Shown here piece by piece: positions 50,453-64,000 of a stretch of DNA of 64,000 bases. The notes beneath the pieces are model-generated. The model did no database searches and was not told the DNA's origin. It saw nothing but the letters and a program-made list of their open reading frames with translations. The DNA lies in the IMG/VR virus record IMGVR_UViG_3300018080_000098, positions 285,794 through 349,793 of that record; one strand, 5' to 3'. The first letter of the stretch is position 1, and each line of letters opens with the position of its first letter. A program made the translations under genes and the position numbers.

Positions 50453-51016
50453 TCAATCGCTTTCCGCCTCGACCGCCTGGACGAGCGCCAGCATTTCCCG
50501 ACACTCCCCAGCTTTGCTCTCAGCCCACCGCGCCGCACACTCGGCCGACTCCAGACAGGCTTGGAGAATACCCTTGGACCTTGGGTGGCGCTTCCACCCC
50601 GACATCCGAGGCAGCCGACAGAAATGGACCGGGGGCAGGTAACCCAGGGCGACGAAAGCCCCGCAGATCTTCCACGTCAAATCCACCCCGCCACCCGTCA
50701 AGGCAAGCCCCGTTAACCCGTTCGAGAACTCCACGATACACAACGGGAAATCCGCGATTTTCTCCGCCGCACCCTCGCAGTCCTGAATGTCCACGGGATA
50801 CCAGTAGCTCATCATCGGACCCGTGTCGCCCTCGTACTCCGTGCCACACTCGGGGCAACAGGGGAATACCCCTACCCCCACGTACTCGTGACCACACTCG
50901 GGGCACTCCACCGCCTCGTAGACGACGTACCCTTCCAGATCCTCGCCCAGAGCCTTCCCCCAGTCGATGTCCTGGGGTGTGCTGTCCACCGCGTTACAGC
51001 TCAGCTTGTTACGCAT
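50453..51016 (-). CDS. Hypothetical phage protein with double Zn ribbon
   Basis: CPECG x2; GLALTGGGVDLTWKIC. Confidence 0.7.
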   Translation of the reverse strand: MRNKLSCNAVDSTPQDIDWGKALGEDLEGYVVYEAVECPECGHEYVGVGVFPCCPECGTEYEGDTGPMMSYWYPVDIQDCEGAAEKIADFPLCIVEFSNGLTGLALTGGGVDLTWKICGAFVALGYLPPVHFCRLPRMSGWKRHPRSKGILQACLESAECAARWAESKAGECREMLALVQAVEAESD

Positions 51017-51194
51017 GGGCCACCTCCCACCGCTCGAACGCCACCCGCGCCGACTCCTCCGCGTCCTTGTCCTTCGCCGTACCGAAGTCCGAACGAATGG
51101 ACATGAGCTCGTTGAACCCCTGCTCGTCCCCCTCCTCCGCCACCCGTTCCAGGTGACTCCACAGCTTGTCGTACCAGTGTTCTCCGAATTTCAT
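51009..51194 (-). CDS. Hypothetical early-cassette protein
   Basis: Start moved to ATG 51194 (AAGGAG RBS). Confidence 0.6.
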   Translation of the reverse strand: MKFGEHWYDKLWSHLERVAEEGDEQGFNELMSIRSDFGTAKDKDAEESARVAFERWEVAHA

Positions 51195-51385
51195 TTTGCA
51201 CTCCTTCGCAGTTTCCTTCCGACACACACAAGTTAAATCGCCGTGCGAAAAAAGCAACTGAAAAAATGAAATATTTTTGAGCGCCGCGGCGCAAGCTTAC
51301 CCTGGGGAGGCAGGGGCTATTGGTTTAACCGAATATCCTGGGGAGCCTTTCGGCTCGAGTCCCCCTATTCGGTTATGTCACTGGG

Positions 51386-51532
51386 CTAGGCGCCGACGAC
51401 GTCGATGGTCCAGCCCCGGCCGAAGGCCATGCGGTACTCCATGGCGAGGATCTCCGCCTCCTGCTTGGACTCGGCCTCGTCCACGACCTCGCTGTTGCCC
51501 TCGTAGTAACCGATAATCAGATACTTGCGCAT
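51386..51532 (-). CDS. 48-aa hypothetical protein (not in ORF track)
   Basis: AAAGGAG RBS; MRKYLIIGYYEGNSEVVDEAESKQEAE. Confidence 0.6.
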   Translation of the reverse strand: MRKYLIIGYYEGNSEVVDEAESKQEAEILAMEYRMAFGRGWTIDVVGA

Positions 51533-51545
51533 AGGGAATCTCCTT

Positions 51546-51986
51546 TCAACACCAGTAGAAACCGCACCCCTTCTCCTGGCAGTGCTCCACCAGTTCCATC
51601 AGGTCATCCAGACGACGGGTGACGTAATCGTCGTCCCGACCACAGTAGACCACCCGACACTGGCCAGTCCCCGGACCACCCGACTCGTAGGGCTCCGCCG
51701 TGGCGCCCGTGCGCACGCTGGCCACGTTGCGCGCTTTGATGATCGCGCGCCGGGTACGGGGAAGGTCCTCGACCTCGACGTGCCCGGAGTAGTCCAGGGA
51801 GCACCCCAGCAGTTCCATCATGGCGTAGGCATTGGCGTTGGCCATGTTGATCGTGGGGCAGTCGGGATCTTCCCGATAACCCGTGCAGAACGGATCGTCG
51901 TTGGTATCCGCATCACACACCTTGCAATAGGTGCAGGGACGCTTGACCATCTTATACTCGTAATCGGGATAGAAGGTGATCGACAT
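51546..51986 (-). CDS. Hypothetical early-cassette protein
   Basis: Start moved to ATG 51986; INMANANA motif. Confidence 0.7.
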   Translation of the reverse strand: MSITFYPDYEYKMVKRPCTYCKVCDADTNDDPFCTGYREDPDCPTINMANANAYAMMELLGCSLDYSGHVEVEDLPRTRRAIIKARNVASVRTGATAEPYESGGPGTGQCRVVYCGRDDDYVTRRLDDLMELVEHCQEKGCGFYWC

Positions 51987-52169
51987 GTTGTGTGCTCCAC
52001 TGTTTCCGTCCGACCAATCAAATATAAGTCGCCTCAATTTTCGCGCAACCCCACAAAAAATTATTTTTGCACGTCGCCTCCCCTCACCTACCGGTTTAAC
52101 CATTAACCCCAAACAAAGAAACGGGGAGAACCCGTAGGCCCTCCCCGCTCCCCTAACTCGTGTGCTCCC

Positions 52170-52409
52170 CTAGTCCGCGATCTCCTCCAGCGCCAGCAGA
52201 TCCCGAAGCAGCGCCCGCTCCGCCGCGCCGCCGGATCCGAAAGCACAGATCGTCACCCAACCACCCGCACCCTTCCGCAGCCAACACCCGTTCACACTCA
52301 CCGGAACCGAGCCCCCGCAGTGCTTGTCCTGCTCCCGCTCGATCGTCGCCAGCACTTCCCCCTTCACCTGCACCCGCGCCGCCGTGTCACTGATCATCTT
52401 GACTTTCAT
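52170..52409 (-). CDS. Hypothetical early-cassette protein
   Basis: Start moved to ATG 52409 (GAGGAG RBS). Confidence 0.6.
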   Translation of the reverse strand: MKVKMISDTAARVQVKGEVLATIEREQDKHCGGSVPVSVNGCWLRKGAGGWVTICAFGSGGAAERALLRDLLALEEIAD

Positions 52410-52586
52410 TTTTGATCTCCTCGCAAACTGTTTTTCCATCCGACCAATCAAATATAAATCGCCGCACAAAAAACACAAGTGACAAAATGAAATATTTTTG
52501 CGCGCAGTGCCCACGACCAGGACAACTCGGTTTAACCAAATATCGTAGGGAAGGGGGACAGGGCGCACCCTGTCCCGTGGGGTATG

Positions 52587-53159
52587 CTACTCGGCGGAGT
52601 GAATGAGGCGAGTCAACTCGTTGGACAACCGCAAAGCGTGCTCCATACCCAGGAACGTCTTGAGCAGGAACACGTTGGTCACCTTGAGCTCTCGGTCGTA
52701 GGGGTCATCCTTATGGTAGATGTCCACGTGAACGTAGTGGCCTTCGCTTCCTCCCTCGACGGCGAACACGGCGATGCGATGGACATTGTCGGGCCAGTGG
52801 GTCCACTCGCGAGTGTACCGCGCACCCGGCCCCACGTCGAAATATTCGTCGACGATCAGACCGGCGTCCTCCAGACGGCTCGACAATTTCTTGAGAATCT
52901 CCGACAGCGGGCGCCCGGACGCGCGCCGGATGTACCCCGTCTCCTCCCCCGTGGATTTCTCCACGACGGGAGCCCAGTCTTCGAGGACTAGCTCGTAGGG
53001 CTTTGTCTCGTTGGGCTCGCCCAGCACGTAGAGCTCTGCCAACTCGTCTTTGCTCAAGTTATACTTGAGGACGTGGTGACGCGCCCACGCATTTTCCGCA
53101 GCAGCGTAGGCACGCTGATCTGCCTCGTTCAATTTGTCCAAGTATTTCTTGGGGATCAT
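52587..53159 (-). CDS. Hypothetical early-cassette protein
   Basis: Start moved to ATG 53159 (AGGAG RBS). Confidence 0.7.
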   Translation of the reverse strand: MIPKKYLDKLNEADQRAYAAAENAWARHHVLKYNLSKDELAELYVLGEPNETKPYELVLEDWAPVVEKSTGEETGYIRRASGRPLSEILKKLSSRLEDAGLIVDEYFDVGPGARYTREWTHWPDNVHRIAVFAVEGGSEGHYVHVDIYHKDDPYDRELKVTNVFLLKTFLGMEHALRLSNELTRLIHSAE

Positions 53160-53374
53160 GTGTGCTCCTGTGTGTTTCCGTCCGATGCACAACAAGTTAA
53201 GGCGGCCCCACAAAAAGTCAACCAGATATTTTACAAACACCCAATTTTATTTCGATAAAATTCGACGGCGCGAAATGAATAATACCCTACGCCCTAACCC
53301 CTTCCCCCTCACCTACTGGTTTAACCATTAAACAGTGCCCCAGGACGGGGCAAGGAATGTGCTGGGCGTAGAGC

Positions 53375-53764
53375 CTAGGCGGGGTAAGGTAGGTCGTCCA
53401 CGTCTACCGAATACATCAGAGCATAATCGCCGCTGTACTCCATGTAGCCGAAGTAGACGGAACCCGGCAGATCAGCAGGCAATTTCGCATTGATCTGCTC
53501 GGCCAGTTTCTCTGTCCCTTCTTCGACGGCTTCGTTGCCGTCGTCATACTTGATGTCTTCGTCCGTGAGTACGATGTCCAGGACCTCCGCGACGTGGCGC
53601 GGGATGTAGATCCCCCGGCAGCAATCCGCGAGGATCTGCAAAGCGACCTCGCATCGATCGTCGTCGCAGTAATCCGCGAAATCGTCCGGGGTTTTCCACC
53701 CGTCCAACCAGCTACGGATCTCCGCCTCGATCCCTTCGACCATCGTTTCCGTGACCTCGATCAT
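53375..53764 (-). CDS. Acidic hypothetical early-cassette protein
   Basis: Start moved to ATG 53764 (AAGGAG RBS). Confidence 0.7.
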   Translation of the reverse strand: MIEVTETMVEGIEAEIRSWLDGWKTPDDFADYCDDDRCEVALQILADCCRGIYIPRHVAEVLDIVLTDEDIKYDDGNEAVEEGTEKLAEQINAKLPADLPGSVYFGYMEYSGDYALMYSVDVDDLPYPA

Positions 53765-53935
53765 TCTGTGTGCTCCTTTTCCGTCCGACGTGCAAAATAT
53801 AATGCGCCGCAATTCGCCGCGCAAGTGCAAAAACGACACGCACTGAATTTTTTTAATGGGCGTCCCCATACCCTATGCCCAGGGCGAGCTCGAGTAGGTT
53901 AAACCAAATAGCAAAGGGGAGAAGCTCCCCCTGGG

Positions 53936-54295
53936 CTAACAGCCCATCATCCTTTCCATCCGACACTCCTGCTCGTAGCACGCCTCGTACTCCAGGTATT
54001 GCTGGTACGCCTTACACGCTTCCGGGTTCTGCTCCTCGAACGTCTCCCAGTCCACCTCCAGCACCTTGCCCGTCGAGCGGCAAGCGGCGCACGGGCGGTC
54101 GTAACCACCCGACATGTAGTGCGCGAAGTCGTCGTGGTCCCAGTCCCGGTCCCGGTCTTCCTGCGTGATGGCTCCGAGGTAGGCCGACTCTTTACCCTCC
54201 CCGTTGCAGACGTAGCAGATCTGCCACTCCATAGGGATCTCCACACAGACTTCGTCGCCGTCGTCGTTCTCGTACTCGAAAAGTTTGCTCGGCAT
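53936..54295 (-). CDS. Acidic protein with CxxCxGxG zinc-finger motifs
   Basis: Start moved to ATG 54295; CYVCNGEG and CAACRSTG. Confidence 0.7.
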   Translation of the reverse strand: MPSKLFEYENDDGDEVCVEIPMEWQICYVCNGEGKESAYLGAITQEDRDRDWDHDDFAHYMSGGYDRPCAACRSTGKVLEVDWETFEEQNPEACKAYQQYLEYEACYEQECRMERMMGC

Positions 54296-54499
54296 CTTGC
54301 GCTCCTGATTCGGTTGTCCGTCCGACACACAAAAAGTAAACCGGCCACACAAAAAGTCAATCGAATATTTTGCAACGCACGGATTTTGTTGCAATAAAAC
54401 TTGACGACGTAAAGACGTGTACCCTAGGGGTATAGCAGCGGTGTTCGGTTAAACCAAAAGGTGAACGCCCCGGGAAGGGGCATCCCGTAGCCGAGGGGT

Positions 54500-54850
54500 C
54501 TACTCGTACCGGACACCCGGGCCGAAGCGCATCCCTGCCTCCGCTCGGCGCTCGGCTTCCTCCTCCGCCCTACACTCCCGGGCGTAGGCCAACTGCTGCT
54601 CCGTCTCCGGGTCCAGGATAGCAGCATCGCTCCAGTAGGGGCTGACCGTGAAGTGCTCGGCGCCCATCCCGCGATACTGGATCGCCCGGTTGACGTTCAC
54701 ACACAGCCGACCGAGACGCGCGGGGACACCCGGCTTGTCGGTCCATTCCGTGTGCTCGTGATACCAGCACCGATTGCTGACATGGTCCTTCACCACCAGC
54801 AAGCAAAGGGTTGCTTCTTCCAGCGGCCAAAGCTCAACGTGTGCGCGCAT
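54500..54850 (-). CDS. Hypothetical early-cassette protein
   Basis: Start moved to ATG 54850 (GGAG RBS). Confidence 0.65.
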   Translation of the reverse strand: MRAHVELWPLEEATLCLLVVKDHVSNRCWYHEHTEWTDKPGVPARLGRLCVNVNRAIQYRGMGAEHFTVSPYWSDAAILDPETEQQLAYARECRAEEEAERRAEAGMRFGPGVRYE

Positions 54851-55081
54851 TGTGTGTCTCCGTGTGCTGTTTCCGTCCGACGCACACAAGATAAATCTGG
54901 CAACCGGAAAGTCAACCAGATATTTCACAACGTCCGAATTTAATTGCGAAAAAACTTTACAACGTCAAGTGTCGTGCGCCCACCCTATCCCCAGGGGTAG
55001 GGCGTTAGGTTTAACCGAGTAATGGAAAAGAAAAAGCGCGCCCCCGAAGGGGCACGCCTTATCCGTGGCGTAGCCCACGGG

Positions 55082-55432
55082 CTACTTCTTCGCCGCCTTC
55101 TTGTCGGGCAGGATGTCGGCGTTCTCCTCGATGAACGCCTCCACCCGCTCCTTGTTCTCGAACAGACGCTTCCACTGGCTCTTGTAGAGGGACACGGGGA
55201 AGCGCATCAGACCGTACACGCAGACGCAGCCCTTCTGGCTGGCCTTGATCGTCAGCTCACCCTGAGCCCGGGTCTTCTTGGCCTGGAGGTTGGCGACCTC
55301 CCGCTTCATGGCCTCCAGCTCCGCGCGGAGGGCGTCGGCTTCGCTCTGCTCGTCGGTCTGGGCCTGAGCCTCGGGGGCGTCCTTGGTAGCGGCTTTTTTC
55401 GTGGGCTTACCGTTGATCGGGTTCTTTTTCAT
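55082..55432 (-). CDS. K[VA]SxKGxVxVYG..RFP-family small protein, copy 1
   Basis: Start moved to ATG 55432; paralogue of 55899-56240. Confidence 0.75.
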   Translation of the reverse strand: MKKNPINGKPTKKAATKDAPEAQAQTDEQSEADALRAELEAMKREVANLQAKKTRAQGELTIKASQKGCVCVYGLMRFPVSLYKSQWKRLFENKERVEAFIEENADILPDKKAAKK

Positions 55433-55725
55433 GCTGTCATCTCCGTGGGCATTGTGCCCGGCTGTTGATTGCGGCGGCTGCTGAATTGCTCCGTCCGACG
55501 CTGCAAAGATAGCAACGCGCGCCGCCCCGCACAAGTGCCAAATTGAATTTAATTTGCAAGGTGCGAATTTTTCAAACGAAAAACTTTACGCTGTCAAGTG
55601 CGGCGCCCCTTGTGCGCGGATAGCCTATCGCGCCACACCCCTAGGGGTACAGGGTATCCCCTGGGCCTCCCCGGAGGCGTTAGGTTTAACCGAATATCCA
55701 CCCCGTCCCCTTGTCATCGGTGTTA

Positions 55726-55840
55726 GGTTTAACCGGGACGGCTGCGGCGCCGCACCCTTTATAGACTATCCAGATCCCCCAGGGGTTATTCACTGACCAC
55801 CCTACCCAACTGGACCACCCACATTTTGTATAGAGAGAAC
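55726..55840. repeat. Long conserved intergenic element C, copy 1
   Basis: GGTTTAACC...GCTGCG...CCTTTATAGACTATCCAGATCCCC...TTTTGTATAGAGAGAAC. Confidence 0.75.
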
Positions 55841-55844
55841 ACCC

Positions 55845-55877
55845 CTTCCCCGGGTAGCACTACGCTACCCGGGGAAG
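55845..55877 (-). terminator. Intrinsic terminator-like hairpin
   Basis: CTTCCCCGGGTAGC/GCTACCCGGGGAAG stem just after stop at 55899. Confidence 0.65.
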
Positions 55878-55898
55878 CGCGGCTGCGTAGCAGCGTAG

Positions 55899-56240
55899 CT
55901 ACTTGGCAGCCTTGTCCTTCTTGTCCGGGAGCAGGTCCTCGTGCTCCTCGATGAACGCCTCGATGTCATCCTTCATGGCGAACAGCCTACGCCACTGCGA
56001 CTTGTAGAACGAGATGGGGAAGCGGCCCATACCGTACACGGACACGCAGCCCTTCTTGCTCACCTTGATGGTGTTCTTCGCCTTGCCCTGCGCGGCGGCA
56101 AGCTGCTGCTTGGCCTGCGCCAACTCCAGCTTGAGAGCGGCAAGCTCCGCCTCGTCTGCGCTCGGCTCGGGGGCCACCTCGGGCTTGCTGGGCTTGCGGG
56201 TTTTCTTTCCGGTGATCAGGTTCTTCTTCGCCATAGTCAT
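55899..56240 (-). CDS. K[VA]SxKGxVxVYG..RFP-family small protein, copy 2
   Basis: KVSKKGCVSVYGMGRFPISFYKSQW; paralogue of 55082-55432. Confidence 0.75.
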   Translation of the reverse strand: MTMAKKNLITGKKTRKPSKPEVAPEPSADEAELAALKLELAQAKQQLAAAQGKAKNTIKVSKKGCVSVYGMGRFPISFYKSQWRRLFAMKDDIEAFIEEHEDLLPDKKDKAAK

Positions 56241-56509
56241 CTCCGTTTGGCCTGTGGGCTGTGCGCCCTGGTTTGTTTGTGTCGGGTGCGTCCGACAGAA
56301 CCCACAGTATCAAAGCAGCATTACGTCGTCAAGTATTTAATCGAATATTTTACAAGCCCGTAAATTGATTTGGATTATGCAGCACCGCACAACACGCTGC
56401 ATCCCTTAGCGCGTACAGCCCATACTCCATCGGGTACAGGGTAGGGCCAGGACGTTCGGTTAAACCAAATGTCCAACGCGCATAGGGTAGGACGTATCCC
56501 ACGCCGTTA

Positions 56510-56634
56510 GGTTTAACCCGTACCCTGCTGCGCCGCGCTGCGTCGTGCAGCCTTTATAGTCTATCCAGATCCCCAGGCCCTCCCAGAATATACCAGAGTA
56601 ATATTTACCACCCCTCATTTTGTATAGAGAGAAC
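56510..56634. repeat. Long conserved intergenic element C, copy 2
   Basis: GGTTTAACC...GCTGCGCCGCGCTGCGTCG...CAGCCTTTATAGTCTATCCAGATCCCC...TTTTGTATAGAGAGAAC. Confidence 0.8.
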
Positions 56635-56641
56635 TACCCCC

Positions 56642-56836
56642 CTACCACCCCTGCCAACGCTTGGGCTTGCGCCACCCCACGCACTGCTCGTAGTGCTCCA
56701 ACGCACCAGACTGCCGCGGGTTGCAACAGTGACACACGTACATAATGATAGGCTTGCCGTCCGCATCATTACCTACCAACTGCGCCTCCATGTTCTGCGC
56801 GCACCGCGGGCAAATACTTTCCTCGGGTCTGCTCAT
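56642..56836 (-). CDS. Small Zn-finger-like protein
   Basis: Start moved to ATG 56836; CPRC...CHCC. Confidence 0.55.
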   Translation of the reverse strand: MSRPEESICPRCAQNMEAQLVGNDADGKPIIMYVCHCCNPRQSGALEHYEQCVGWRKPKRWQGW

Positions 56837-57045
56837 GATGCTTTCCCCTCCCGCCACTTCCGCATGGCCTGGTTATATCCCGAGTCCGGGTTGCACAGGA
56901 TACAGTCCCCGTGCCCGCAGTCCCGCACCCCGTTCGACTGCGCGGCATCCTGGCGCCGCTCCACCGCACCCACGCCCACCCGCTCCCGGTACTGCGTACA
57001 CACTACACAGGCGCAGTGTACCGCGTTGTGTCCTTTGGGCAGCAT
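56833..57045 (-). CDS. Small Cys-rich protein
   Basis: HCACVVC...CGHGDCILC. Confidence 0.55.
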   Translation of the reverse strand: MLPKGHNAVHCACVVCTQYRERVGVGAVERRQDAAQSNGVRDCGHGDCILCNPDSGYNQAMRKWREGKAS

Positions 57046-57047
57046 GA

Positions 57048-57218
57048 CTACTCCTCGTGCTCCAGCTTCACGAACTCCACTATCCTCGGAACCCCGTCCG
57101 TGCTGTACTCACTGTACCCATCGAACGTGTAGCCCCGCTCCGCAGCTTCCGCGAAACTCGCTTCACAGTTGGGCCGTACCAGATATTTCACGGCCTTGAG
57201 TTTCTTTTCTTTGTCCAT
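57048..57218 (-). CDS. Hypothetical protein
   Basis: Start moved to ATG 57218. Confidence 0.5.
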   Translation of the reverse strand: MDKEKKLKAVKYLVRPNCEASFAEAAERGYTFDGYSEYSTDGVPRIVEFVKLEHEE

Positions 57219-57228
57219 TGGAACCACC

Positions 57229-58119
57229 CTAGAACGCACTCGCCTTCAGCGGGCTACCGCAGATGGGGCAGTGGGGTACGCCGTCCTCGTCCACGTAGAT
57301 GTACCCGGCGCCCGGCTCGGGGTCCGACCCGTCCTCCATCTCCGCATCGTACTTGACGATCTCGCAGTCCTTCAGCGCCACGACGTCATTACCGTTCGGG
57401 TCACAGGCGTACTCCTCGTACCCGTTGCACAGCTCCCAGTGTGCGCCGCACGGACCACCGTCCGACCCACCATCCATCCGAAGCTGCTCGGGACGGTTCG
57501 CCGTGTCCTCACAGTAGATCGTCGCCCGCCCGTCGTCGAACATCGCGAGCTCACTGTTGCCGCTCACGTCGAAGGCCACCGCCCGGGTGTACCCACCGCG
57601 CACGTCCGCGCCGCCGTGAATTTGGAGCAGCACGTGACCACCGTCCTCGTCCTCCCAGTAACAATACTGGATGACCTGCGACAGCAGCGACTCGTGGTTG
57701 TAGGTGTTCACCGTCACCGGCGAACCCTCACCGTAGATGCCGCCGAACTCCGTGCCGTACTCCTCGGCCTCCATCTCCAGCAGCTTCATGAACTCCTCGA
57801 CACAGGCGAACCAGGACTCGTCCTCCATCTCGCCCGTCGTCGCGAAAGTGTGGAACCGCTTGTCCAACTCCTCGTTGTACTCCAGCCGGTCCTTCAGCCA
57901 GTGGTACAGGTTGAGCGTGATGTCCAGGTAGTCCCAGCTACCGTCCAGCACAGCCTCGGGCTCGTTCTCGAAAGCCCGACCCTGGTTACGTTGCCAGTGA
58001 CGACCACACGCCCCGCCACTGTCCATCATATGAATACCCGTCCGCTCGGTCAACATGTCGTGAATGACCTGAGCCGTCACGTCCTGAATGTCCTGGTCGT
58101 TGTCCTTGATGGCGTTCAT
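57229..58119 (-). CDS. Conserved-looking phage hypothetical protein
   Basis: Start moved to ATG 58119; TGIHMMDSGGACGRHWQRN, VNTYN, LLQIHGGADVRGGYT motifs. Confidence 0.75.
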   Translation of the reverse strand: MNAIKDNDQDIQDVTAQVIHDMLTERTGIHMMDSGGACGRHWQRNQGRAFENEPEAVLDGSWDYLDITLNLYHWLKDRLEYNEELDKRFHTFATTGEMEDESWFACVEEFMKLLEMEAEEYGTEFGGIYGEGSPVTVNTYNHESLLSQVIQYCYWEDEDGGHVLLQIHGGADVRGGYTRAVAFDVSGNSELAMFDDGRATIYCEDTANRPEQLRMDGGSDGGPCGAHWELCNGYEEYACDPNGNDVVALKDCEIVKYDAEMEDGSDPEPGAGYIYVDEDGVPHCPICGSPLKASAF

Positions 58120-58341
58120 TTCGCTTGCCTCCGATGCGGTTTGTTTTTTCCGTCCGACGAAACAAATATAAATTCGGCGCACAAAAAAGTCAATCAAATA
58201 TTTTTGACGCGCCGATTTTTTCGCGGGTATGCCTCCCTTCCCGCACGCACTCTATAATAGGTATACCCTACACTCTACCCCTCGAGCTCCCCGTTCGGTT
58301 TAACCATACGCCCTACCCCATACCCCTTGTCCACGTTGTTC

Positions 58342-58467
58342 GGTTTAACCAACAGACCTGCCGCGCCGCGCTGCGTCGAGCAGCCTTTATAGTCTATCCA
58401 GACCCGCCAGGAATATTTCGCACGCTGCCAAACGAATAGACTAAAGGGAATTTTGTATAGAGAGAAC
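58342..58467. repeat. Long conserved intergenic element C, copy 3
   Basis: Same blocks plus GGAATATTT.CACGCTGCC...GACTAAAGGGAA shared with copy 4. Confidence 0.8.
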
Positions 58468-58695
58468 CTACCCCTCCGGGTTGCTCCTATTACATCGACC
58501 GTTCATCGTCGAAGCCTCCCACCCCACCTCTTTGCGCTCGCGCCATTCTGCTACCGCTTTATCCACTTCGGCTTGTCGCTCCGGTGGAGGATCGGCATAG
58601 CGTTCCCTCGGTAGGATACAGTGGCACGTTGGCCCACAGCACCAACTGAATTTACACTGCTCGCAGTCATAGCGATAACGTGGTACGCGGTCCAT
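58468..58695 (-). CDS. Small Cys-rich protein
   Basis: CEQC...CCGPTCHC. Confidence 0.55.
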   Translation of the reverse strand: MDRVPRYRYDCEQCKFSWCCGPTCHCILPRERYADPPPERQAEVDKAVAEWRERKEVGWEASTMNGRCNRSNPEG

Positions 58696-58696
58696 T

Positions 58697-59179
58697 CTAC
58701 CACTCCCCCAGCCTACTTAGCTCCGTAGGATACACCCTGTCCTCCGGCAACGGGTAGTCCTCGTCCGACACGAACACGTAGCCCACCAGGCTAGTGTAGG
58801 GTGGGTTCCTGTCGTGGCTCCCGTCGTCCACCCACACTTCGTACAGTAGTACCTGCGGGTAGTCTTTCAACGGGCGCCGGGTCCTCGGCAGCACCACGTC
58901 GCCGCGTTCACTCTTGGGCTTGTCTAGTGGTCTGCTGTCCAACTCTAAGTCCAGGTCCCGAATGGTCCAGCCCTTGCCGTCGAACGCTCGCAGGTCCGTG
59001 GAAAATACACGAGCCACCCGGGGCGCCACGAGCGTAGGCTTTGTCACCGTGACCCGAGTAGGCAAGTACAGGTCCACAGGTAGCCGCATGAAAAACTGCG
59101 ACACCTTGGGGCACTGGAATTCCTCCAAGGGAATAAACTCTCCCAGCGTCACCGTGGGTTTGGGGTTGGGCTTCGGCAC
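58697..59179 (-). CDS. Hypothetical protein
   Basis: AAGGAG RBS; GTG start. Confidence 0.6.
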   Translation of the reverse strand: MPKPNPKPTVTLGEFIPLEEFQCPKVSQFFMRLPVDLYLPTRVTVTKPTLVAPRVARVFSTDLRAFDGKGWTIRDLDLELDSRPLDKPKSERGDVVLPRTRRPLKDYPQVLLYEVWVDDGSHDRNPPYTSLVGYVFVSDEDYPLPEDRVYPTELSRLGEW

Positions 59180-59189
59180 CGGCTACTCC

Positions 59190-59591
59190 TTATTTCAGTT
59201 CCGCCGTGGCACCCACGTTCTTGAGCGCCTTGACCAGCGCCAGCTTGCGACCACCCGAGAGCTTCTGGGTTCCCCGGAATTTGTTGTCCAGCTTTACCGG
59301 GGTACGTTCGGACAACTCCTTCGCCTCCTTCAGCCCAATCTCCAGGTGCTCACGCAGCGCCTTGATTACCTGGATTTTCTGTTGTCCGTGGTTTACCAGG
59401 ACAAGGCTTCCCATGATGGCGTTCTCTGCACCCTCCGGGTCCTTCACTGCTTCCGTGAACAGATGCAATACACAACGGCTCACCGTGATACCGTACATGT
59501 GATTCAGCGTACCTACCACCGCCATCGCTTCGCGCGGGGTTAGCGTGCTCAGTCCCTCGGCCAGCAGAGAAATCTTTTCCTTGTTTCGCAT
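59190..59591 (-). CDS. rplL: Ribosomal protein bL12 (L7/L12) homologue, copy 1
   Basis: NTD-like LSTLTPREAMAVV...YGITV; CTD QKIQVIKALREHLEIGLKEAKELSE; ends ALKNVGATAELK. Confidence 0.8.
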   Translation of the reverse strand: MRNKEKISLLAEGLSTLTPREAMAVVGTLNHMYGITVSRCVLHLFTEAVKDPEGAENAIMGSLVLVNHGQQKIQVIKALREHLEIGLKEAKELSERTPVKLDNKFRGTQKLSGGRKLALVKALKNVGATAELK

Positions 59592-59692
59592 TGTCTTTAG
59601 CTCCTGTGCGTTTTTCCGTCCGACGCAATCAAAAATATCAAACGCTCATTACGTTGTCAAGAAAAAAAAATCGGCGCGCGGCTTCGCCTTCA

Positions 59693-59715
59693 CTAGCTAG
59701 TTATTATCTAGCATC
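59693..59715 (+). promoter_or_regulatory. Conserved upstream motif of + strand gene (candidate phage-specific promoter), copy 1
   Basis: CTAGCTAGTTATTATCTAGCATC, near-identical to 63100-63122; both precede CAGGAG RBS and an MPAK start. Confidence 0.55.
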
Positions 59716-59739
59716 ACACCCACACAGGAGAACTCCCTT

Positions 59740-59989
59740 ATGCCTGCAAAAACGAATTAAAGTCAACGGGCAGACCTACATAGCTGCGGACGCCTACAGC
59801 CAGCAACTACTAGGAAACATCAAACAGACTATCAAGGAAGCACTCGACGCCTTCACTCTCTACAACGGGTATGCCTACGGGGCTCGAGCAGAGGAGCTAG
59901 ACGCAGGCCTTCGACAAGACCTGGAAGAAACCGAAAGCAACCTGCGCAATAAGCTAGACGCCCTCAAGAATCTCGCGGCTAGACTGTAG
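59740..59989 (+). pseudogene. GxxY-motif small gene interrupted by one extra A in an A5 run
   Basis: ATG CCT GCA AAA ACG AAT TAA; removing one A gives MPAKRIKVNGQTYIAAD..., parallel to 63146 MPAKHIQVNGHKY. Confidence 0.65.
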
Positions 59990-60013
59990 CCCTACCCCTT
60001 CCCCACGTTGTTC

Positions 60014-60137
60014 GGTTTAACCGTTCGTCCGGCTGCGCCGCGCTGCGTCGGGCAGCCTTTAGACTATCCAAACCCACAGGGAATATTTTTCACGCTGCCC
60101 AGCAGACAGACTAAAGGGAATTTTGTATAGAGAGAAG
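60014..60137. repeat. Long conserved intergenic element C, copy 4
   Basis: Near-identical to copy 3; lies where + and - genes converge. Confidence 0.8.
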
Positions 60138-60347
60138 CTGGTCTACCAACCTCTTCCAGTTCTCTATCCATTCTTTTTGTTCTTGCAGACATTCCTGACA
60201 GCGGTCCGTTTGGTCTATTTTCCCTCGACACAAAGGCTCACCGCACCTTGTTCCTCCGAGCAACTCAGGCAAAAATACCAGACGCCCAGCCTCGGGGACA
60301 AAGTCTTCGTACTTGAACCGCAGGTCCCTACCCCTTCTCCAGCCCAT
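60111..60347 (-). CDS. Hypothetical protein
   Basis: Start moved to ATG 60347; 3' end runs into element C. Confidence 0.45.
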   Translation of the reverse strand: MGWRRGRDLRFKYEDFVPEAGRLVFLPELLGGTRCGEPLCRGKIDQTDRCQECLQEQKEWIENWKRLVDQLLSIQNSL

Positions 60348-60597
60348 CGAGCAGCTTGTCCAGCACCACGTCGTGCATGAGCTTGCGGCGGATAGTGTAC
60401 CCCGAATCAAAACGAGTGTCCGCAAACTCTACCATGTTCACCATGCCCATGAACAACACCACGAAATCCTCGGTGGACATGCGCCGCAATACCCGGTCCA
60501 CGTACCAGTCCAGCCCGTAGTGGGAACTCTTCCCGTAACGCTCCTCGTCCTGAGCTTTGTCCTTCCGAGCCTGCTCTATGACTTCGCGGATAGTCAT
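60328..60597 (-). CDS. Hypothetical protein
   Basis: AGGA RBS; 89 aa. Confidence 0.6.
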   Translation of the reverse strand: MTIREVIEQARKDKAQDEERYGKSSHYGLDWYVDRVLRRMSTEDFVVLFMGMVNMVEFADTRFDSGYTIRRKLMHDVVLDKLLDGLEKG

Positions 60598-60609
60598 GGT
60601 TCCTACCTG

Positions 60610-60828
60610 CTACTCCTGCACGTGAAGACTACCCGCGAGCATCCCCCACAATTCGTCCAGCGTGACACCGGACTCCAAGATGTACTCCACTTGTTCGGTA
60701 AGCCCACCGTTGTTGATGGCGCTCGCTTCACCGGCTTTCAGGTCGTGGACAATCTCGTCCAGGTCCACAGACTCGCACCCGTCTGCCTCCAGCAGCTTGA
60801 CCACCCGGTCCAACTCTTTCGCGTCCAT
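60610..60828 (-). CDS. Hypothetical phage protein
   Basis: LDEIVHDLKAGEASAINNGGLTEQVEYI motif. Confidence 0.65.
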   Translation of the reverse strand: MDAKELDRVVKLLEADGCESVDLDEIVHDLKAGEASAINNGGLTEQVEYILESGVTLDELWGMLAGSLHVQE

Positions 60829-60831
60829 GAC

Positions 60832-60996
60832 TTACTCCTGCTCCTTTTTCTTTTGGAGCCCCACCCCTCCACACTTCGTGCAGCGGTCCACACCCTCCGG
60901 GTCTTTCAGACTCGAACCGTACCCGTCGCAGTGATCACAGAATTCGTACCCGTGAGCCTCGGGGTTCATCATTACGTCGAAGTCCAGAACTTTCAT
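60832..60996 (-). CDS. Small DnaJ-type Zn-finger-like protein
   Basis: Start moved to ATG 60996; CDHCDGYG and CTKCGGVG. Confidence 0.6.
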   Translation of the reverse strand: MKVLDFDVMMNPEAHGYEFCDHCDGYGSSLKDPEGVDRCTKCGGVGLQKKKEQE

Positions 60997-61077
60997 TTCC
61001 GTCTCTCCGTTTCGCAATTCGTGCGATCGAAAATATCAAACGCGCTTTACGCCGTCAAGAAAAAATTTCGCAAGCAG

Positions 61078-61518
61078 CTAAAAGTCGTGAACGTCCCCAC
61101 ACTCCGGACACGCCGCGCAAACCTCCGCACACACTATCCCGGTGTCCGGGTCGCAGTAGGGCAGCACTGTGTGCGCCGCTCCGCAACACTCGAACTCTCG
61201 ATACAACTCCGGTCCAGGTTCCGGGACCTCCCCGTAGCTGAACACAAACTGAGGGTTCACCACCGCGTACTCCCGACTGCCCCCGTCCTTCACCGAAGCG
61301 TGGGAACGGAAAGACTTGAGCGGACTCACCACCAACCGGCGTACCGTCCGGTTATACTCCCCCTCCTCGATCAGTGCCACGCGAGGTAAACTCGTCTCAC
61401 GCTCGTACCCCAGAACACACTCCCGACTGTACCCGTGAATAGTCGCGTGCCCATCCTCCCCCACCGTGAACGCTACCGTCCACACCGAATCAATCAGCCT
61501 CTTCGTTGCGTACCGCAT
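61078..61518 (-). CDS. Hypothetical protein
   Basis: AAGGAG RBS; C-terminal Cys cluster. Confidence 0.65.
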   Translation of the reverse strand: MRYATKRLIDSVWTVAFTVGEDGHATIHGYSRECVLGYERETSLPRVALIEEGEYNRTVRRLVVSPLKSFRSHASVKDGGSREYAVVNPQFVFSYGEVPEPGPELYREFECCGAAHTVLPYCDPDTGIVCAEVCAACPECGDVHDF

Positions 61519-61528
61519 CCGTCTCTCC

Positions 61529-61930
61529 TTACCTGAACTCCACCACCGCTCCTACACCCCGAAGCGCCTGCGCCAAAGCCAGCTTCCGCCGACCCGTCAA
61601 CTTCTCCCGATTCCGGTACTTGTTCCCCAGTACCACAGGGACCGCCTCCGACAAGTCCTTGGCTTCCTTCAGCCCGATCTCCAGATGCTCCCGCAGCACC
61701 TTGATCACCTGGATCTTCCGCTCCCCATACCCCACCAGCATCAGCTTCCCCACTACCGCCTCCGCTGACCCCTCCGGATCCTGCGCAGCCTCCCCCAGCA
61801 GATGCACCACACAACGACTCACCGTGAGCCCATACGTGTGGTTCATCGTTCCCACCACAGCCATCGCCTCGCGAGGCGTCAACGTGCTCAACGCCTCCGC
61901 CAACAAAGAAATCTTTTCGTGGTTACGCAT
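61529..61930 (-). CDS. rplL: Ribosomal protein bL12 (L7/L12) homologue, copy 2
   Basis: Paralogue of 59190-59591; RKIQVIKVLREHLEIGLKEAKDLSE; ends ALRGVGAVVEFR. Confidence 0.8.
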   Translation of the reverse strand: MRNHEKISLLAEALSTLTPREAMAVVGTMNHTYGLTVSRCVVHLLGEAAQDPEGSAEAVVGKLMLVGYGERKIQVIKVLREHLEIGLKEAKDLSEAVPVVLGNKYRNREKLTGRRKLALAQALRGVGAVVEFR

Positions 61931-62011
61931 CGCTCTAGCTCCTGTTGTTTCCGTCCGACGCGATCAAAAATATCAAATCAACTTGACGCTGTCAAGAAAA
62001 AATTTCGGCGG

Positions 62012-62533
62012 CTACTTCTCTTCTTTCCTTAACCGCAACACACCTTCTCCACCCGGGTCTACGCCCGCAGTGACACTCACCACAGACTCCACCCCTACCG
62101 TGTCCCCGTCCCAATACTCACAGTTGTCCGCGTGAGCTACCAGCGTAGCCCGAGTATCCTTGTCGAGAATATCCTGCACGCTATCAGCTTCCACGTAGAA
62201 CTCGACTTCCTCGACCACCGTCCGCTGCATCTTGACCAAGTAGACCTTGCGCTTGTCGTACTCCGTCCCGTCCGCGCAGACTACTTTCTCCAGAGTCTTC
62301 GACGTGCCTGCCCCTATCAGCTGCACCCCAACCTCCGGATTGTCCGCGTGTACCGAAATAGCAGACCCCTCCCGACCCGCTATCCTCTGTGCCAAACTGC
62401 GCGCAGTCTCCAGAGCTTCCACATGGGTAGGGATACTATCCTCGTACAGTTGCCACTCAGGCTTGTACGCTCGGTAAATACCCACCACCCAAAAAGACCC
62501 TCGGTGTTTTACGTGAACTTCCACAGCAGCCAT
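62012..62533 (-). CDS. Hypothetical protein
   Basis: AGGAG RBS; 173 aa. Confidence 0.65.
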   Translation of the reverse strand: MAAVEVHVKHRGSFWVVGIYRAYKPEWQLYEDSIPTHVEALETARSLAQRIAGREGSAISVHADNPEVGVQLIGAGTSKTLEKVVCADGTEYDKRKVYLVKMQRTVVEEVEFYVEADSVQDILDKDTRATLVAHADNCEYWDGDTVGVESVVSVTAGVDPGGEGVLRLRKEEK

Positions 62534-62542
62534 TGGCTTCTC

Positions 62543-62995
62543 CTACGCCCAAAGACTCTTGAGCTTCGTCTTCCGCGCCCGCAGGTACACCCCCCGCCCC
62601 ATGGCGAACCCGGAATAAATATCTCCCTCGAACTCGAAGCGAAGGTAGGTCCGCTCGCCCCCGAAGTTGTCGCGGCACTCGTTCAGAATGTTCACCCTGG
62701 CCGACAGTACCCCACCGGGCCAGTTGGTCACACTCTTCCCGTCACTCGACAGGTAAGCGAACACCCTACCCGTCTCCTGAATGTGAGCCTTCTCTCTTTC
62801 CGTTGCACACTCGTAGCAGAACGTCTCCCCCGTCTCCGGGTTCTCCCCGTACCCCGTGGTCATCGGCATACCGTGGGGATGCAGATGTCTCGGTGCGCTC
62901 GGCTTGTGTCCGCAGTCCAGCTTCCGCGCGTAGTACGCATCGGCAAAGTTCTGCGCGAACAGGCTACGTCTCTCTTCTTCACTCGTGTTGTGCAT
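62543..62995 (-). CDS. Hypothetical phage protein
   Basis: Start moved to ATG 62995; FCYECA, AYLSSDGKSVTNWPG motifs. Confidence 0.7.
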   Translation of the reverse strand: MHNTSEEERRSLFAQNFADAYYARKLDCGHKPSAPRHLHPHGMPMTTGYGENPETGETFCYECATEREKAHIQETGRVFAYLSSDGKSVTNWPGGVLSARVNILNECRDNFGGERTYLRFEFEGDIYSGFAMGRGVYLRARKTKLKSLWA

Positions 62996-63099
62996 TTTCT
63001 CGCTCCACTGTTTCCGTCCAACAAATCGAATATAAATCGCCGCGCCGCGTTTGTCAATCAAATATTTTTCACGCACCGATTTTTTGCGGCTCACCTTCC

Positions 63100-63122
63100 C
63101 TAGATAGTTATTCTCTAGCATC
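63100..63122 (+). promoter_or_regulatory. Conserved upstream motif of + strand gene, copy 2
   Basis: CTAGATAGTTATTCTCTAGCATC. Confidence 0.55.
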
Positions 63123-63145
63123 GTACACCAACAGGAGCATTTATC

Positions 63146-63409
63146 ATGCCTGCGAAACATATTCAGGTCAACGGCCACAAGTATCAACTCGTTACCGCAG
63201 ACCAGGACGAGCTAAACGCACTGCGCCAGCAATTAGAGCGCCACAAAAAACAGGCGAAAGAAATGTTCTTCGCCCTCGGCTACATCATATCGTGGATAGT
63301 AAAAGACGAGGTCGCCCCCAAGGTAGGAGAAGAAGTAGCGAAGGATATAAGGAGTAGGCTGGAGAGTATCAGAAACAACCTACGTTCATTAGGGTGGCCG
63401 TCCGGATAA
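63146..63409 (+). CDS. Small GxxY-motif protein on the + strand within the early region
   Basis: CAGGAG RBS; MPAKHIQVNGHKYQLVTA. Confidence 0.7.
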   Translation: MPAKHIQVNGHKYQLVTADQDELNALRQQLERHKKQAKEMFFALGYIISWIVKDEVAPKVGEEVAKDIRSRLESIRNNLRSLGWPSG

Positions 63410-63462
63410 CCCCTCAAGCTCCATCCCTACCCCCTGAGCGTACACCCACCTCCCCGTCGTTC

Positions 63463-63596
63463 GGTTTAACCATTCGTCCCGCTGCGCCGCGGCGCATCGA
63501 AGCAGCTCACCAACCCTTTAGACTATCCAGATGCGACAACAATATTTTTGAAGGTGCGAAGCGGTTAGACTATCCACAATTTTGTATAGAGAGAAC
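63463..63596. repeat. Long conserved intergenic element C, copy 5
   Basis: GGTTTAACC...GCTGCGCCGC...CCTTTAGACTATCCAGAT...TAGACTATCCA...TTTTGTATAGAGAGAAC. Confidence 0.75.
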
Positions 63597-63601
63597 CTAC
63601 C

Positions 63602-64000
63602 CTACCCACACTCAGGACACTCATCACCGTGCGTCAGAAGCGCCCCGCACTCAGCGCAAGCCGGAACTTCGATTACGTGATCCTTCAGCCACTGAGCCGC
63701 TAGGTCGATAAAGGCTTTGTACTCCTTCAGCTCCTCTTCAGAGTAGCCGTGAGACTCCCCGATCTCCCGGTAGTTCTTCAGCCAATACTCCACCGTATGT
63801 ACCTCACACCCCACGGCAATCTTGTCCGCGGCGGCTGTAGTCAGGAAATACCGAGAGCCCTGGATTTGCAGCGGCGAAATTTCCCAAGCACTCCCGTACA
63901 CCCGAGCATCCCCGTACACCCGAGCATCCCCGTACACCCGAGCATCCCCGTACACCCGAGCATCCCCGTACACCCGAGCATCCCCGTACACCCGAGCATC
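63602..64000 (-). CDS. Hexapeptide (VYGDAR) repeat protein, 5' end outside window
   Basis: 18-bp tandem repeat CCCGTACACCCGAGCATC (x6) at ~63893-64000 encodes VYGDAR; left-handed beta-helix-like; C-terminal CAEC...CPEC. Confidence 0.75.
   Translation of the reverse strand, partial: DARVYGDARVYGDARVYGDARVYGDARVYGDARVYGSAWEISPLQIQGSRYFLTTAAADKIAVGCEVHTVEYWLKNYREIGESHGYSEEELKEYKAFIDLAAQWLKDHVIEVPACAECGALLTHGDECPECG

What the first reader, a model, noticed from the sequence alone, without database searches (positions are those of the whole stretch)
59190..61930. Two full-length ribosomal protein bL12 paralogues as first genes of early cassettes
Seen: both 133-aa proteins have an NTD-like dimerisation segment, a non-Ala-rich linker and a CTD retaining the factor-binding KIQVIKxLR surface and GLKEAK, with an insertion before the last helix. 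Each is directly behind a strong promoter and leader. Established: bL12 forms the ribosomal stalk via uL10 and recruits IF2, EF-Tu and EF-G; phage bL12 homologues have been reported. Inference: early expression of two divergent copies could remodel or poison the host stalk, titrate GTPases, or protect against EF-targeting defences.
Basis: partly seen in the sequence, partly recalled or inferred. Interest (0 to 1): 0.65.

Follow-up and report, generated by a model that had tools for sequence, protein, structure and literature searches.

The report
Two basic phage bL12-like stalk proteins
A 350-kb uncultured phage carries two diverged copies of the ribosomal stalk protein bL12 that keep the surface that recruits translation factors but, unlike every cellular bL12 compared, are positively charged with a stiff-looking linker, so they probably alter the host ribosome stalk rather than simply top it up.

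Summary
Two 133-aa minus-strand ORFs (59190-59591 and 61529-61930) are 69% identical. Both pass the Pfam bL12 C-terminal domain cut-off and keep every invariant factor-binding residue. Each sits behind a TTGACA-17-TATTTT promoter-like site, a conserved leader and an AGGAG ribosome-binding site.

The N-terminal domain fails the Pfam model PF16320. With a deeper family alignment, an NTD-only profile-profile comparison to cellular bL12 NTDs is significant (P 4.5e-6; shuffles far lower). "Full-length bL12 homologue" is therefore supported.

New here: the proteins belong to a monophyletic clade of about 13 clusters, separated from cellular bL12 by a long branch. Its members lie in a shared, shuffled module on phage-like contigs related to this genome. 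The clade is basic (pI 8.8-10.1 in 11 of 13) whereas 113 cellular bL12 have pI 4.2-6.5. Its linker is hydrophobic and conserved rather than Ala/Gly/Pro-rich.

The duplication is specific to this sublineage. Both copies are under purifying selection (dN/dS 0.16; NTD 0.05). "First gene of a cassette" is not conserved in relatives, and "early" is inferred.

Phage bL12 genes are already known, so this is a new variant of a known kind. Ribosome binding remains untested.

The parts
59190..59591 (-). bL12-like paralogue 1 (133 aa, pI 9.7, net charge +7). It is the more derived copy.
   Evidence: ORF. PF00542 42 bits. Aligns over its full length with PDB bL12 chains. AF2 and Foldseek identify bL12. 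Charge. Longer stem in the tree.
59592..59667 (-). Promoter-like site (-35 TTGACA from 59660, -10 TATTTT ending at 59632, with TG), leader GTCGGACGGAAA (59624-59613) and AGGAG site upstream of paralogue 1.
   Evidence: repeat family D5.
61529..61930 (-). bL12-like paralogue 2 (133 aa, pI 9.6, net charge +5). It is closer to the rest of the family.
   Evidence: ORF. PF00542 42 bits. 83% identical to P0003. All relatives are closer to this copy than to copy 1.
61931..62002 (-). Promoter-like site (-35 TTGACA from 61995, -10 TATTTT ending at 61967, with TG), leader GTCGGACGGAAA (61959-61948) and AGGAG site upstream of paralogue 2.
   Evidence: The same promoter (97% identical) drives a different gene in L005.
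58697..59179 (-). 160-aa ORF 11 nt downstream of paralogue 1, probably co-transcribed; no family match.
   Evidence: An orthologue follows the bL12 gene in L005.
61078..61518 (-). 146-aa Cys-rich ORF 11 nt downstream of paralogue 2, probably co-transcribed; no family match.
59975..60160 (-). Conserved inter-cassette block at an operon end, between the two bL12 cassettes. One of at least 4 copies.
   Evidence: no Rfam match.

Best explanation
The two genes encode members of a distinct, basic subfamily of the ribosomal stalk protein bL12. The subfamily is conserved on phage-like contigs related to this uncultured 350-kb phage, and the gene was duplicated in this sublineage. Each protein keeps the bL12 plan: an N-terminal two-helix dimerisation and uL10-binding module, a linker of cellular length (23 residues), and a C-terminal domain with the complete helix-4/helix-5 face that cellular bL12 uses to recruit IF2, EF-Tu, EF-G and RF3.

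The most likely mechanism has three steps. The genes are transcribed by host RNA polymerase from strong sigma-70-type promoters, probably early in infection. The proteins dimerise through the NTD and exchange onto the uL10 helix of host ribosomes, in place of or alongside host bL12. They still recruit the host's translational GTPases, since the phage has no match to the translational-GTPase domain model PF00009. The positive charge and the conserved, hydrophobic linker would change how the stalk behaves, for example its mobility, its contact with rRNA, or its recognition by host factors that dock on bL12.

Shown here: homology, domain plan, conservation of the factor face, charge reversal, purifying selection, clade membership and promoter context. 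Inferred: early timing, dimerisation, uL10 binding, ribosome incorporation, and the consequence for translation or defence.
For: CTD identity. PF00542 is above cut-off. Foldseek top hits are bL12, with CTD TM 0.75-0.87. All cellular invariant residues are kept in both copies, and K72, I73, I76, K77, R80, L87, K88, A90 and K91 are invariant or nearly so across the 13-cluster family.

NTD homology. Alignment to PDB bL12 is co-linear over the full length. NTD-only hhalign gives P 4.5e-6 and score 27.9, against shuffles of 8.5 +/- 2.1 with a maximum of 15.7, and is in register. PF16320 gives sub-threshold, in-register hits in family members P0128 and P0133. Atlas feature and structure neighbours of residues 1-60 are PF16320 clusters. 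AF2 places two N-terminal helices at 4-15 and 19-33.

Constraint. dN/dS is 0.16 overall and 0.047 in the NTD, at a saturated dS of about 1.4. Linker length is 23 residues against a cellular mean of 24.4.

Clade. The family is monophyletic at 100/100 support and is shared among related phage-like contigs that also share an AAA ATPase and other genes with this genome.

Partner genes. The phage has no match to uL10 or to the translational-GTPase domain model, so any such partners must be host proteins.

Promoters.

Precedent. bL12 is an exchangeable ribosomal protein, and a phage bL12-domain protein was detected in purified E. coli 70S (PMC6375957).
Against: The Pfam NTD model does not recognise either window protein, even at E<=10. 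An NTD-only profile finds no bL12 in the PDB. The conserved charged NTD surface of cellular bL12 is replaced (E30N, E31H, K32M/T, K27G). A basic stalk protein with a hydrophobic, conserved linker departs from two near-universal bL12 traits, which could mean it no longer works on the ribosome. The affinity-purification attempt for a phage bL12 in PMC6375957 failed. The host is unknown, and there is no expression or binding evidence. The complex prediction with B. subtilis uL10 gave no verdict.
Confidence: 0.45

Rival explanations
1. Off-ribosome decoy or sponge. The proteins form soluble dimers that do not bind uL10. They display the conserved helix-4/5 face to capture proteins that normally dock on the stalk. 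These could be host translational GTPases, which would throttle host translation, or defence effectors that need bL12, such as stalk-captured CARF-RelE (Cami1-type) nucleases.
For: The factor face is invariant while the rest of the CTD and the NTD surface have diverged. The NTD fails PF16320. The linker is conserved and hydrophobic with a predicted third helix at 37-47. By analogy with the compact form of T. maritima L12 (my recollection of 1DD3, not tested here), that helix could fold back on the NTD. A Cami1-70S structure with a bL12 CTD chain is among the fold matches (8phj), and Cami1 is a common type III CRISPR effector (PMC11229360).
Against: A decoy needs only the CTD, and many phages carry CTD-only or fusion forms (PMC6375957). 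Here the NTD is the most constrained part (dN/dS 0.047) and the linker keeps cellular length. Single bL12 CTD-factor contacts are weak in cells (general knowledge), so titration would need very high protein levels. No defence link was tested.
Confidence: 0.27
2. Plain auxiliary supply. The genes act as ordinary bL12, raising stalk occupancy or copy number to speed translation during infection.
For: The architecture is full-length and the factor face is intact. There are strong promoters and two gene copies. This is the usual reading of viral ribosomal proteins (PMC6375957, PMC7162821, PMC11934525).
Against: A long branch (about 2.6 substitutions per site) separates the clade from cellular bL12 and from the canonical acidic bL12 of other huge phages (L111 and L116, pI 5.1). 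Charge reversal, an altered linker and an altered NTD surface are conserved across the clade. The two copies diverged to saturated dS and both persist, which is not a dosage pattern.
Confidence: 0.13
3. RNA-binding adaptor. The basic CTD binds RNA, for example the shared leader of the phage's promoter units or rRNA near the GTPase centre, and couples it to factor recruitment.
For: CTD net charge is +5 to +8, against a cellular mean of +0.7 and maximum of +3. A strictly conserved 12-nt leader follows about 24 promoters.
Against: No RNA-binding domain signature was found. The leader motif is absent from the more distant relatives that still carry the basic protein. No structured RNA family was detected.
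Confidence: 0.08
4. Decaying or non-functional captured genes.
For: They diverge from cellular bL12 and fail the Pfam NTD model.
Against: dN/dS is 0.16 (0.05 in the NTD) at saturated dS. The frames are intact with promoters and ribosome-binding sites. The family is conserved across a deep clade.
Confidence: 0.02

Closest known systems
Cellular ribosomal protein bL12 (RplL, L7/L12)
   Same: Same domain order and similar length. The CTD fold is the same (TM 0.75-0.87) and passes PF00542. All invariant helix-4/5 factor-binding residues are kept. The NTD is a two-helix hairpin with the hydrophobic skeleton and the [FY]-G-[VIL] motif in register. The linker is of cellular length.
   Different: pI 8.8-9.7 against 4.2-6.5. 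The linker is hydrophobic and conserved rather than Ala/Gly/Pro-rich. The NTD fails PF16320 and has lost the conserved acidic and basic surface residues. The last helix is basic instead of acidic. There is a 6-residue insertion before it. No uL10 gene is adjacent or anywhere else in the genome.
Phage 'bL12 domain' proteins (Mizuno et al. 2019, PMC6375957: Ralstonia RSB3, roseophages DSS3P2 and DFL12phi1, Salmonella FSL SP-058/076; also Curtobacterium phage Nonagon gp90)
   Same: They are phage-encoded, carry a PF00542 domain and keep the conserved factor-contact residues. Nonagon gp90 shares the motifs VIKVLR.HL.IGL.EAK and NVGAT with the window proteins.
   Different: Those are CTD-only proteins, or CTDs embedded in larger proteins with unrelated N-termini, in phages of 44-76 kb. 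Each genome has a single copy. Here a bL12-type NTD and linker are retained, the genome is 350 kb, and there are two paralogues.
Canonical full-length bL12 of other huge phages (Al-Shayeb et al. 2020, PMC7162821; IMG/VR loci L111 of 363 kb and L116 of 529 kb)
   Same: Full-length bL12 genes in genomes above 200 kb.
   Different: Those are acidic (pI 5.1), have cell-like NTDs and Ala/Pro linkers, and group with cellular bL12 in the tree. The window proteins lie on the other side of a 100/100 branch.
ClpS adaptor (same alpha/beta fold class as the bL12 CTD)
   Same: Weak structural resemblance to the CTD (Foldseek TM about 0.36-0.39).
   Different: There is no sequence signal, and the bL12-specific invariant residues are present. 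ClpS was rejected as an assignment.

Membership tests
bL12 / RplL (ribosomal stalk protein) | C-terminal domain matching PF00542 above the gathering score | tested here: met
   42 bits against a cut-off of 25.9 for both proteins. Fold match to bL12 CTDs at TM 0.75-0.87.
bL12 / RplL (ribosomal stalk protein) | Invariant factor-binding residues of helices 4 and 5 (E. coli K65, V66, I69, K70, R73, G79, L80, E82, A83, K84; the numbering is from my knowledge of the literature) | tested here: met
   K72 I73 I76 K77 R80 G86 L87 E89 A90 K91 are identical to columns that are 100% conserved in 113 cellular bL12.
bL12 / RplL (ribosomal stalk protein) | N-terminal dimerisation/uL10-binding domain matching PF16320 above the gathering score | tested here: not met
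   No hit at E<=10 for either window protein. Relatives P0128 and P0133 reach only 16.8 and 13.8 bits against a cut-off of 25.
bL12 / RplL (ribosomal stalk protein) | NTD homologous to the bL12 NTD by profile-profile comparison | tested here: met
   NTD-only hhalign gives probability 86.6%, P 4.5e-6 and score 27.9, against shuffles of 8.5 +/- 2.1 with a maximum of 15.7, and is in register. The 4-sequence version gave P 9e-4. Atlas neighbours of residues 1-60 are PF16320 clusters, which is lead-level evidence only.
bL12 / RplL (ribosomal stalk protein) | Flexible Ala/Gly/Pro-rich hinge | tested here: not met
   Ala+Gly+Pro fraction is 0.22-0.30 against a cellular mean of 0.49. Hydrophobic fraction is 0.26-0.35 against a mean of 0.14. 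12 of 23 linker residues are invariant among the four close sequences. Length (23 residues) is cellular.
bL12 / RplL (ribosomal stalk protein) | Acidic protein | tested here: not met
   pI 9.72 and 9.56, net charge +7 and +5. The 113 cellular bL12 have pI 4.17-6.49 and net charge -15 to 0.
bL12 / RplL (ribosomal stalk protein) | Binds uL10 helix alpha8 as dimers and is part of the 50S stalk | tested here: inconclusive
   The complex prediction with B. subtilis uL10 residues 120-166 gave no verdict, which counts neither for nor against. The host is unknown. A biochemical test is needed.
Phage-encoded bL12-domain proteins (Mizuno 2019) | Encoded in a phage genome, carrying a PF00542 domain with conserved factor-contact residues | tested here: met
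   The record is a 349,793-bp virus record with PolA, RNR, GyrA-like and UvrD-like genes. PF00542 and the conserved residues are covered.
Basic full-length bL12-like clade (delimited here) | Monophyly apart from cellular bL12; NTD motif MN.EK...LA.DL..LT..EA..V[VI]G; basic pI; location in a shared gene module on related phage-like contigs | tested here: met
   Clade support is 100/100. The motif is seen. pI is 8.8-10.1 in 11 of 13 members. Neighbouring genes are shared with this genome.

The most novel reading that the evidence does not exclude
The clade is a bL12 that phages have re-engineered. It is a positively charged stalk protein with a structured linker that still binds translational GTPases. 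It would act as a dominant modifier of the host ribosome or as an off-ribosome trap. For example, it could lock or shield the GTPase-associated centre, or intercept stalk-dependent defence nucleases. The two paralogues would have split these tasks, or would form a heterodimer. This would be a dedicated viral strategy aimed at the ribosomal stalk, rather than an auxiliary copy of a host gene.
Probability: 0.3. Interest if true: 0.75.

Novelty: new variant of a known kind. Interest (0 to 1): 0.55.

Why it matters
Viral ribosomal proteins are known, but almost nothing is known about what they do. Nearly all discussion treats viral bL12 as a spare part.

This clade keeps the exact factor-recruiting face and a constrained NTD, while inverting the charge and replacing the flexible hinge. 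Charge and hinge are two properties thought to underlie how the stalk works. That combination points to a changed function.

It also gives a compact, testable system of 133-aa proteins. The questions are whether a phage rewires the stalk, how much charge and hinge flexibility matter for factor recruitment, and whether stalk-dependent defences are being countered.

The duplicated, long-maintained pair adds a natural comparison of two variants within one genome.

Tried and rejected
- Complex prediction. Two copies of residues 1-50 were folded with B. subtilis uL10 residues 120-166. The result was no verdict (score 0.02, controls not run), so it is not used for or against binding. The uL10 choice was a guess, because the host is unknown.
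- AF2 on the four phage sequences alone. pLDDT was 44, too poor to use beyond helix positions.
- NTD-only hmmsearch against PDB sequences. No bL12 hit; the top hits were chance matches at E>1.
- PF16320 against the genome: nothing.
- Host inference. Megablast to phages found nothing. PolA is at most 27% identical to cultured phages. The UvrD-like helicase is nearest to Bacillota PcrA at 36-41%. Together with strong AGGAG sites this is only a weak hint, so no host is claimed.
- The viral-contig scan with the 4-sequence alignment found nothing. The wider alignment found only canonical or fusion forms.
- tblastn of a cellular bL12 against the phage collection mostly returned host-like fragments in poorly curated records.
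- A weak uS17 hit in the 173-aa neighbour (E 0.006) was not confirmed at genome level.
- ClpS was rejected as a fold assignment.
- Rfam found nothing in 56000-64000.
- Neighbouring cassette proteins and ten other small proteins of the region have no Pfam family. Ten large ORFs have no PHROG.
Full report
OBSERVATION. The window is the last 64 kb of a 349,793-bp virus record. They are 69% identical without gaps.

Both pass the Pfam bL12 C-terminal domain model (42 bits, cut-off 25.9). A six-frame search of the whole genome with that model finds exactly these two genes. phmmer against PDB sequences aligns the whole protein co-linearly with bL12 of several bacteria, with a best E of 1.6e-7.

An AF2 model built on a 117-sequence alignment has mean pLDDT 68. 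It shows helices at 4-15 and 19-33, a third helix followed by a low-confidence stretch (residues 38-59 below pLDDT 50), and then the beta-alpha-alpha-beta-alpha-beta CTD. Foldseek returns full-length bL12 (1rqu, 1dd3) and bL12 CTDs at TM 0.75-0.87.

Every column that is 100% conserved in 113 cellular bL12 is identical in both phage proteins. These are G69, K72, I73, I76, K77, R80, G86, L87, E89, A90, K91 and G127. From the literature as I know it, this is the helix-4/5 face that contacts IF2, EF-Tu, EF-G and RF3. The cellular comparison set was collected by shared words with the query, which may inflate conservation in helix 4. The Pfam model and the literature agree on these positions.

THE N-TERMINAL DOMAIN.

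- Against: PF16320 finds nothing in the proteins or the genome, even at E<=10. An NTD-only profile finds no bL12 in the PDB.
- For: an NTD-only profile-profile comparison (residues 1-46 of the four close sequences against 24 cellular NTDs) scores 18.8 with P 9e-4. It is in register, and 100 column-shuffled controls give 7.9 +/- 1.7 with a maximum of 13.2.
- For: after the exhaustive search supplied nine more family clusters, the same test gives probability 86.6%, P 4.5e-6 and score 27.9. Shuffles give 8.5 +/- 2.1 with a maximum of 15.7.
- For: two of those relatives receive sub-threshold PF16320 hits in register, at E 0.006 and 0.05.
- For, at lead level only: the ESM Atlas queried with residues 1-60 returns PF16320 clusters by features (score 0.84) and by structure (TM 0.53-0.59).

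What is retained is the hydrophobic skeleton, E21, V26 and the [FY]-G-[VIL] motif. What is lost is the conserved charged surface (E30N, E31H, K32M/T, K27G). I conclude that the NTD is a divergent bL12 NTD.

WHAT IS UNUSUAL. All four close sequences are basic, with pI 8.8-9.7 and net charge +2 to +7. All 113 cellular bL12 in the comparison are acidic to neutral, with pI 4.17-6.49 and net charge -15 to 0.

The charge shift lies mainly in the CTD (+5 to +8, against a cellular mean of +0.7 and maximum of +3). It is concentrated in the loop and last helix. The NTD contributes as well (0 or +1, against a mean of -3.2).

The linker has cellular length (23 residues against a mean of 24.4). However, it is poor in Ala/Gly/Pro (0.22-0.30 against 0.49) and rich in hydrophobic residues (0.26-0.35 against 0.14). 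Twelve of its 23 positions are invariant among the four close sequences. A 6-residue insertion precedes the last helix, but its length varies in the wider family.

A CLADE, NOT A PRIVATE ODDITY. The word-based search found only three close relatives. Because the claim of rarity rested on absence, I ran the exhaustive profile search.

It found nine further clusters of 125-144-aa proteins that align from residue 3 to about 130 at 65-117 bits, well above cellular bL12. They share the NTD motif MN.EK...LA.DL..LT..EA..V[VI]G and the linker motif AV.[DN]P[ED]EA. Eleven of the 13 family members have pI 8.8-10.1.

In a maximum-likelihood tree the 13 form one clade with 100/100 support. A long branch separates it from cellular bL12 and from the canonical bL12 of two other huge phages. 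Those two (L111 at 363 kb and L116 at 529 kb) are acidic, with pI 5.1.

The relatives lie on phage-like contigs made of long same-strand arrays of small unannotated ORFs with AAA ATPases and ParB_N. One is also recorded on a contig of 0.2-1 Mb. Their neighbours include homologues of genes at 8-22 kb and 346-348 kb of this genome, for example an AAA ATPase at 52% identity. The gene is therefore a conserved part of one shared module in a group of related phages.

THE DUPLICATION. Copy 1 with P0001 (98%), and copy 2 with P0003 (83%), make one subclade with 100/98 support. Relatives outside it show one copy within +/-8 kb. Copy 1 has the longer stem, and every outside relative is closer to copy 2.

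Between the copies dS is saturated (about 1.4) and dN/dS is 0.16. By region it is 0.047 in the NTD, 0.15 in the CTD core, 0.31 in the linker and 0.26 in the tail. Both copies are thus maintained by selection, and the NTD is the most constrained part.

The phage has no match to uL10, to the translational-GTPase domain model PF00009, to bS21 or to uS17.

GENOMIC SETTING. The 'direct terminal repeat' is 82 bp of an 18-nt tandem repeat, so the ends are an assembly junction.

About 24 units of TTGAC-17 nt-TAT.TT, the leader GTCGGACGGAAA and a Shine-Dalgarno site lie on the minus strand. They run from about 330 kb through the junction to about 16 kb. Both bL12 genes are the first gene behind such a unit.

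This arrangement is not conserved. In L005 (99% nucleotide identity for copy 1) a 79-aa gene lies between the promoter and the bL12 gene. There is no copy 2 between the 150-aa gene and copy 1. The promoter that drives copy 2 here (97% identical) drives another gene there. In L107, L110, L118 and L121 the gene is internal to operons. The leader motif occurs only in the closest relatives.

The picture is of cassettes shuffled at repeated promoter and terminator-like blocks. From memory, this resembles the promoter-stem-loop cassettes described for T4-type phages. 'Early' is inferred from the sigma-70-type promoters and the gene content, and no reads could be obtained.

MECHANISM. Three features fit a protein that still takes the bL12 position on uL10 and recruits host GTPases. 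These are the retention of a bL12-type NTD under the strongest constraint, a linker of unchanged length, and an invariant factor face. The lack of a uL10 or PF00009 (translational-GTPase) match in the phage points the same way.

The conserved charge reversal and the structured linker argue that it is not a mere spare part. I rank the explanations as follows:

- stalk replacement with altered properties, 0.45;
- off-ribosome decoy for GTPases or for stalk-dependent effectors such as Cami1 (8phj; PMC11229360), 0.27;
- plain supplementation, 0.13;
- RNA-binding adaptor, 0.08;
- decaying or non-functional captured genes, 0.02.

The only binding test available gave no verdict.

COMPARISON AND NOVELTY. 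Phage bL12 genes are established (PMC6375957, PMC7162821, PMC11934525; BFVD hits). Most cultured examples are CTD-only proteins or fusions (PMC6375957; Nonagon gp90), and some huge phages have canonical acidic copies.

I found no description of a basic, full-length, NTD-divergent clade, or of a maintained paralogue pair, in the papers searched. That search was limited. I therefore rate this a new variant of a known kind, with moderate-to-good interest.

Noticed in passing
window 63602-64000 (and genome start): An 18-nt tandem repeat (CCCGAGCATCCCCGTACA) encodes YGDARV repeats at the N-terminus of a 129-aa minus-strand ORF. It runs off the record end, and the record's 'direct terminal repeat' is just 82 bp of this repeat. 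The genome ends are therefore an assembly junction, and the repeat number is uncertain.
   Followed up: partly
window 44366-63022 and genome 2-16 kb, minus strand: There are about 24 units of a sigma-70-like promoter followed by the invariant leader GTCGGACGGAAA, a Shine-Dalgarno site and a start codon, roughly one per 1.5 kb. The leader motif is found only in the closest relatives (L005, L107). Its role is unknown; it could be the transcript 5' end, a processing site or a factor-binding site.
   Followed up: partly
window 56440-56660, 58255-58490, 59975-60160, 63425-63620: Conserved blocks of 160-230 nt lie at operon ends. They contain the invariant TTCTCTCTATACAAAAT, a GC-rich hairpin (GCTGC.CGACGCAGC) and GGTTAAACCGAAC. 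There is no Rfam match. They may be terminators, another promoter class or recombination sites for cassette shuffling.
   Followed up: partly
window 63146-63409 (+) and 59740-59989 (+): Two small plus-strand paralogous genes lie inside the minus-strand region. Each is preceded by a near-palindromic element (CTAG.TAGTTATT.TCTAGCATC) and AGGAG. The copy at 59740 reads MPAKTN-stop. One extra A in an A-run shifts it out of the frame that continues RIKVNGQTY, so it is a frameshift, a sequencing error or a pseudogene.
   Followed up: partly
L005, L107 versus window 57975-63100: Close relatives carry the same genes in a different order, with genes present or absent (79-aa gene, copy 2, 173-aa against 98-aa versions). 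The breakpoints lie at the repeated promoter and leader elements, which indicates modular cassette shuffling.
   Followed up: partly
window 62012-62533 (-): A 173-aa ORF just upstream of the copy-2 promoter has a weak Ribosomal_S17 hit (E 0.006, 17 bits, below cut-off). A genome-level search does not reproduce it, so it is probably chance or a generic OB-like fold.
   Followed up: yes
P0122-P0127, P0139, P0256; L124: Many long proteins in the metagenomic library carry 3-9 tandem canonical bL12 C-terminal domains, for example 7 in 593 aa and 8 in 692 aa. P0122 lies in a bacterial genome assembly (GCA_020073745.1), next to a sigma-54 activator and a Ser/Thr kinase. Their function is unknown.
   Followed up: partly
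ESM Atlas clusters: The Atlas lists viral clusters of about 60-aa proteins that consist only of the bL12 dimerisation domain (PF16320). Such NTD-only viral proteins would be natural candidates for stalk capping. This is a lead only.
   Followed up: no
genome 60096-63086 (L011): The phage DNA polymerase A (996 aa) has an N-terminal uracil-DNA-glycosylase-superfamily domain fused to the exonuclease and polymerase domains. Its nearest cultured relatives are at most 27% identical.
   Followed up: no
window 60832-61017 (-): A 61-aa ORF between the two bL12 cassettes has CxxC pairs. It gives weak DnaJ CXXCXGXG and zinc-ribbon hits that are below cut-off.
   Followed up: no
window 47922-48084 (-): Adjacent tRNA-His(GTG) and tRNA-Tyr(GTA) genes.
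   Followed up: no
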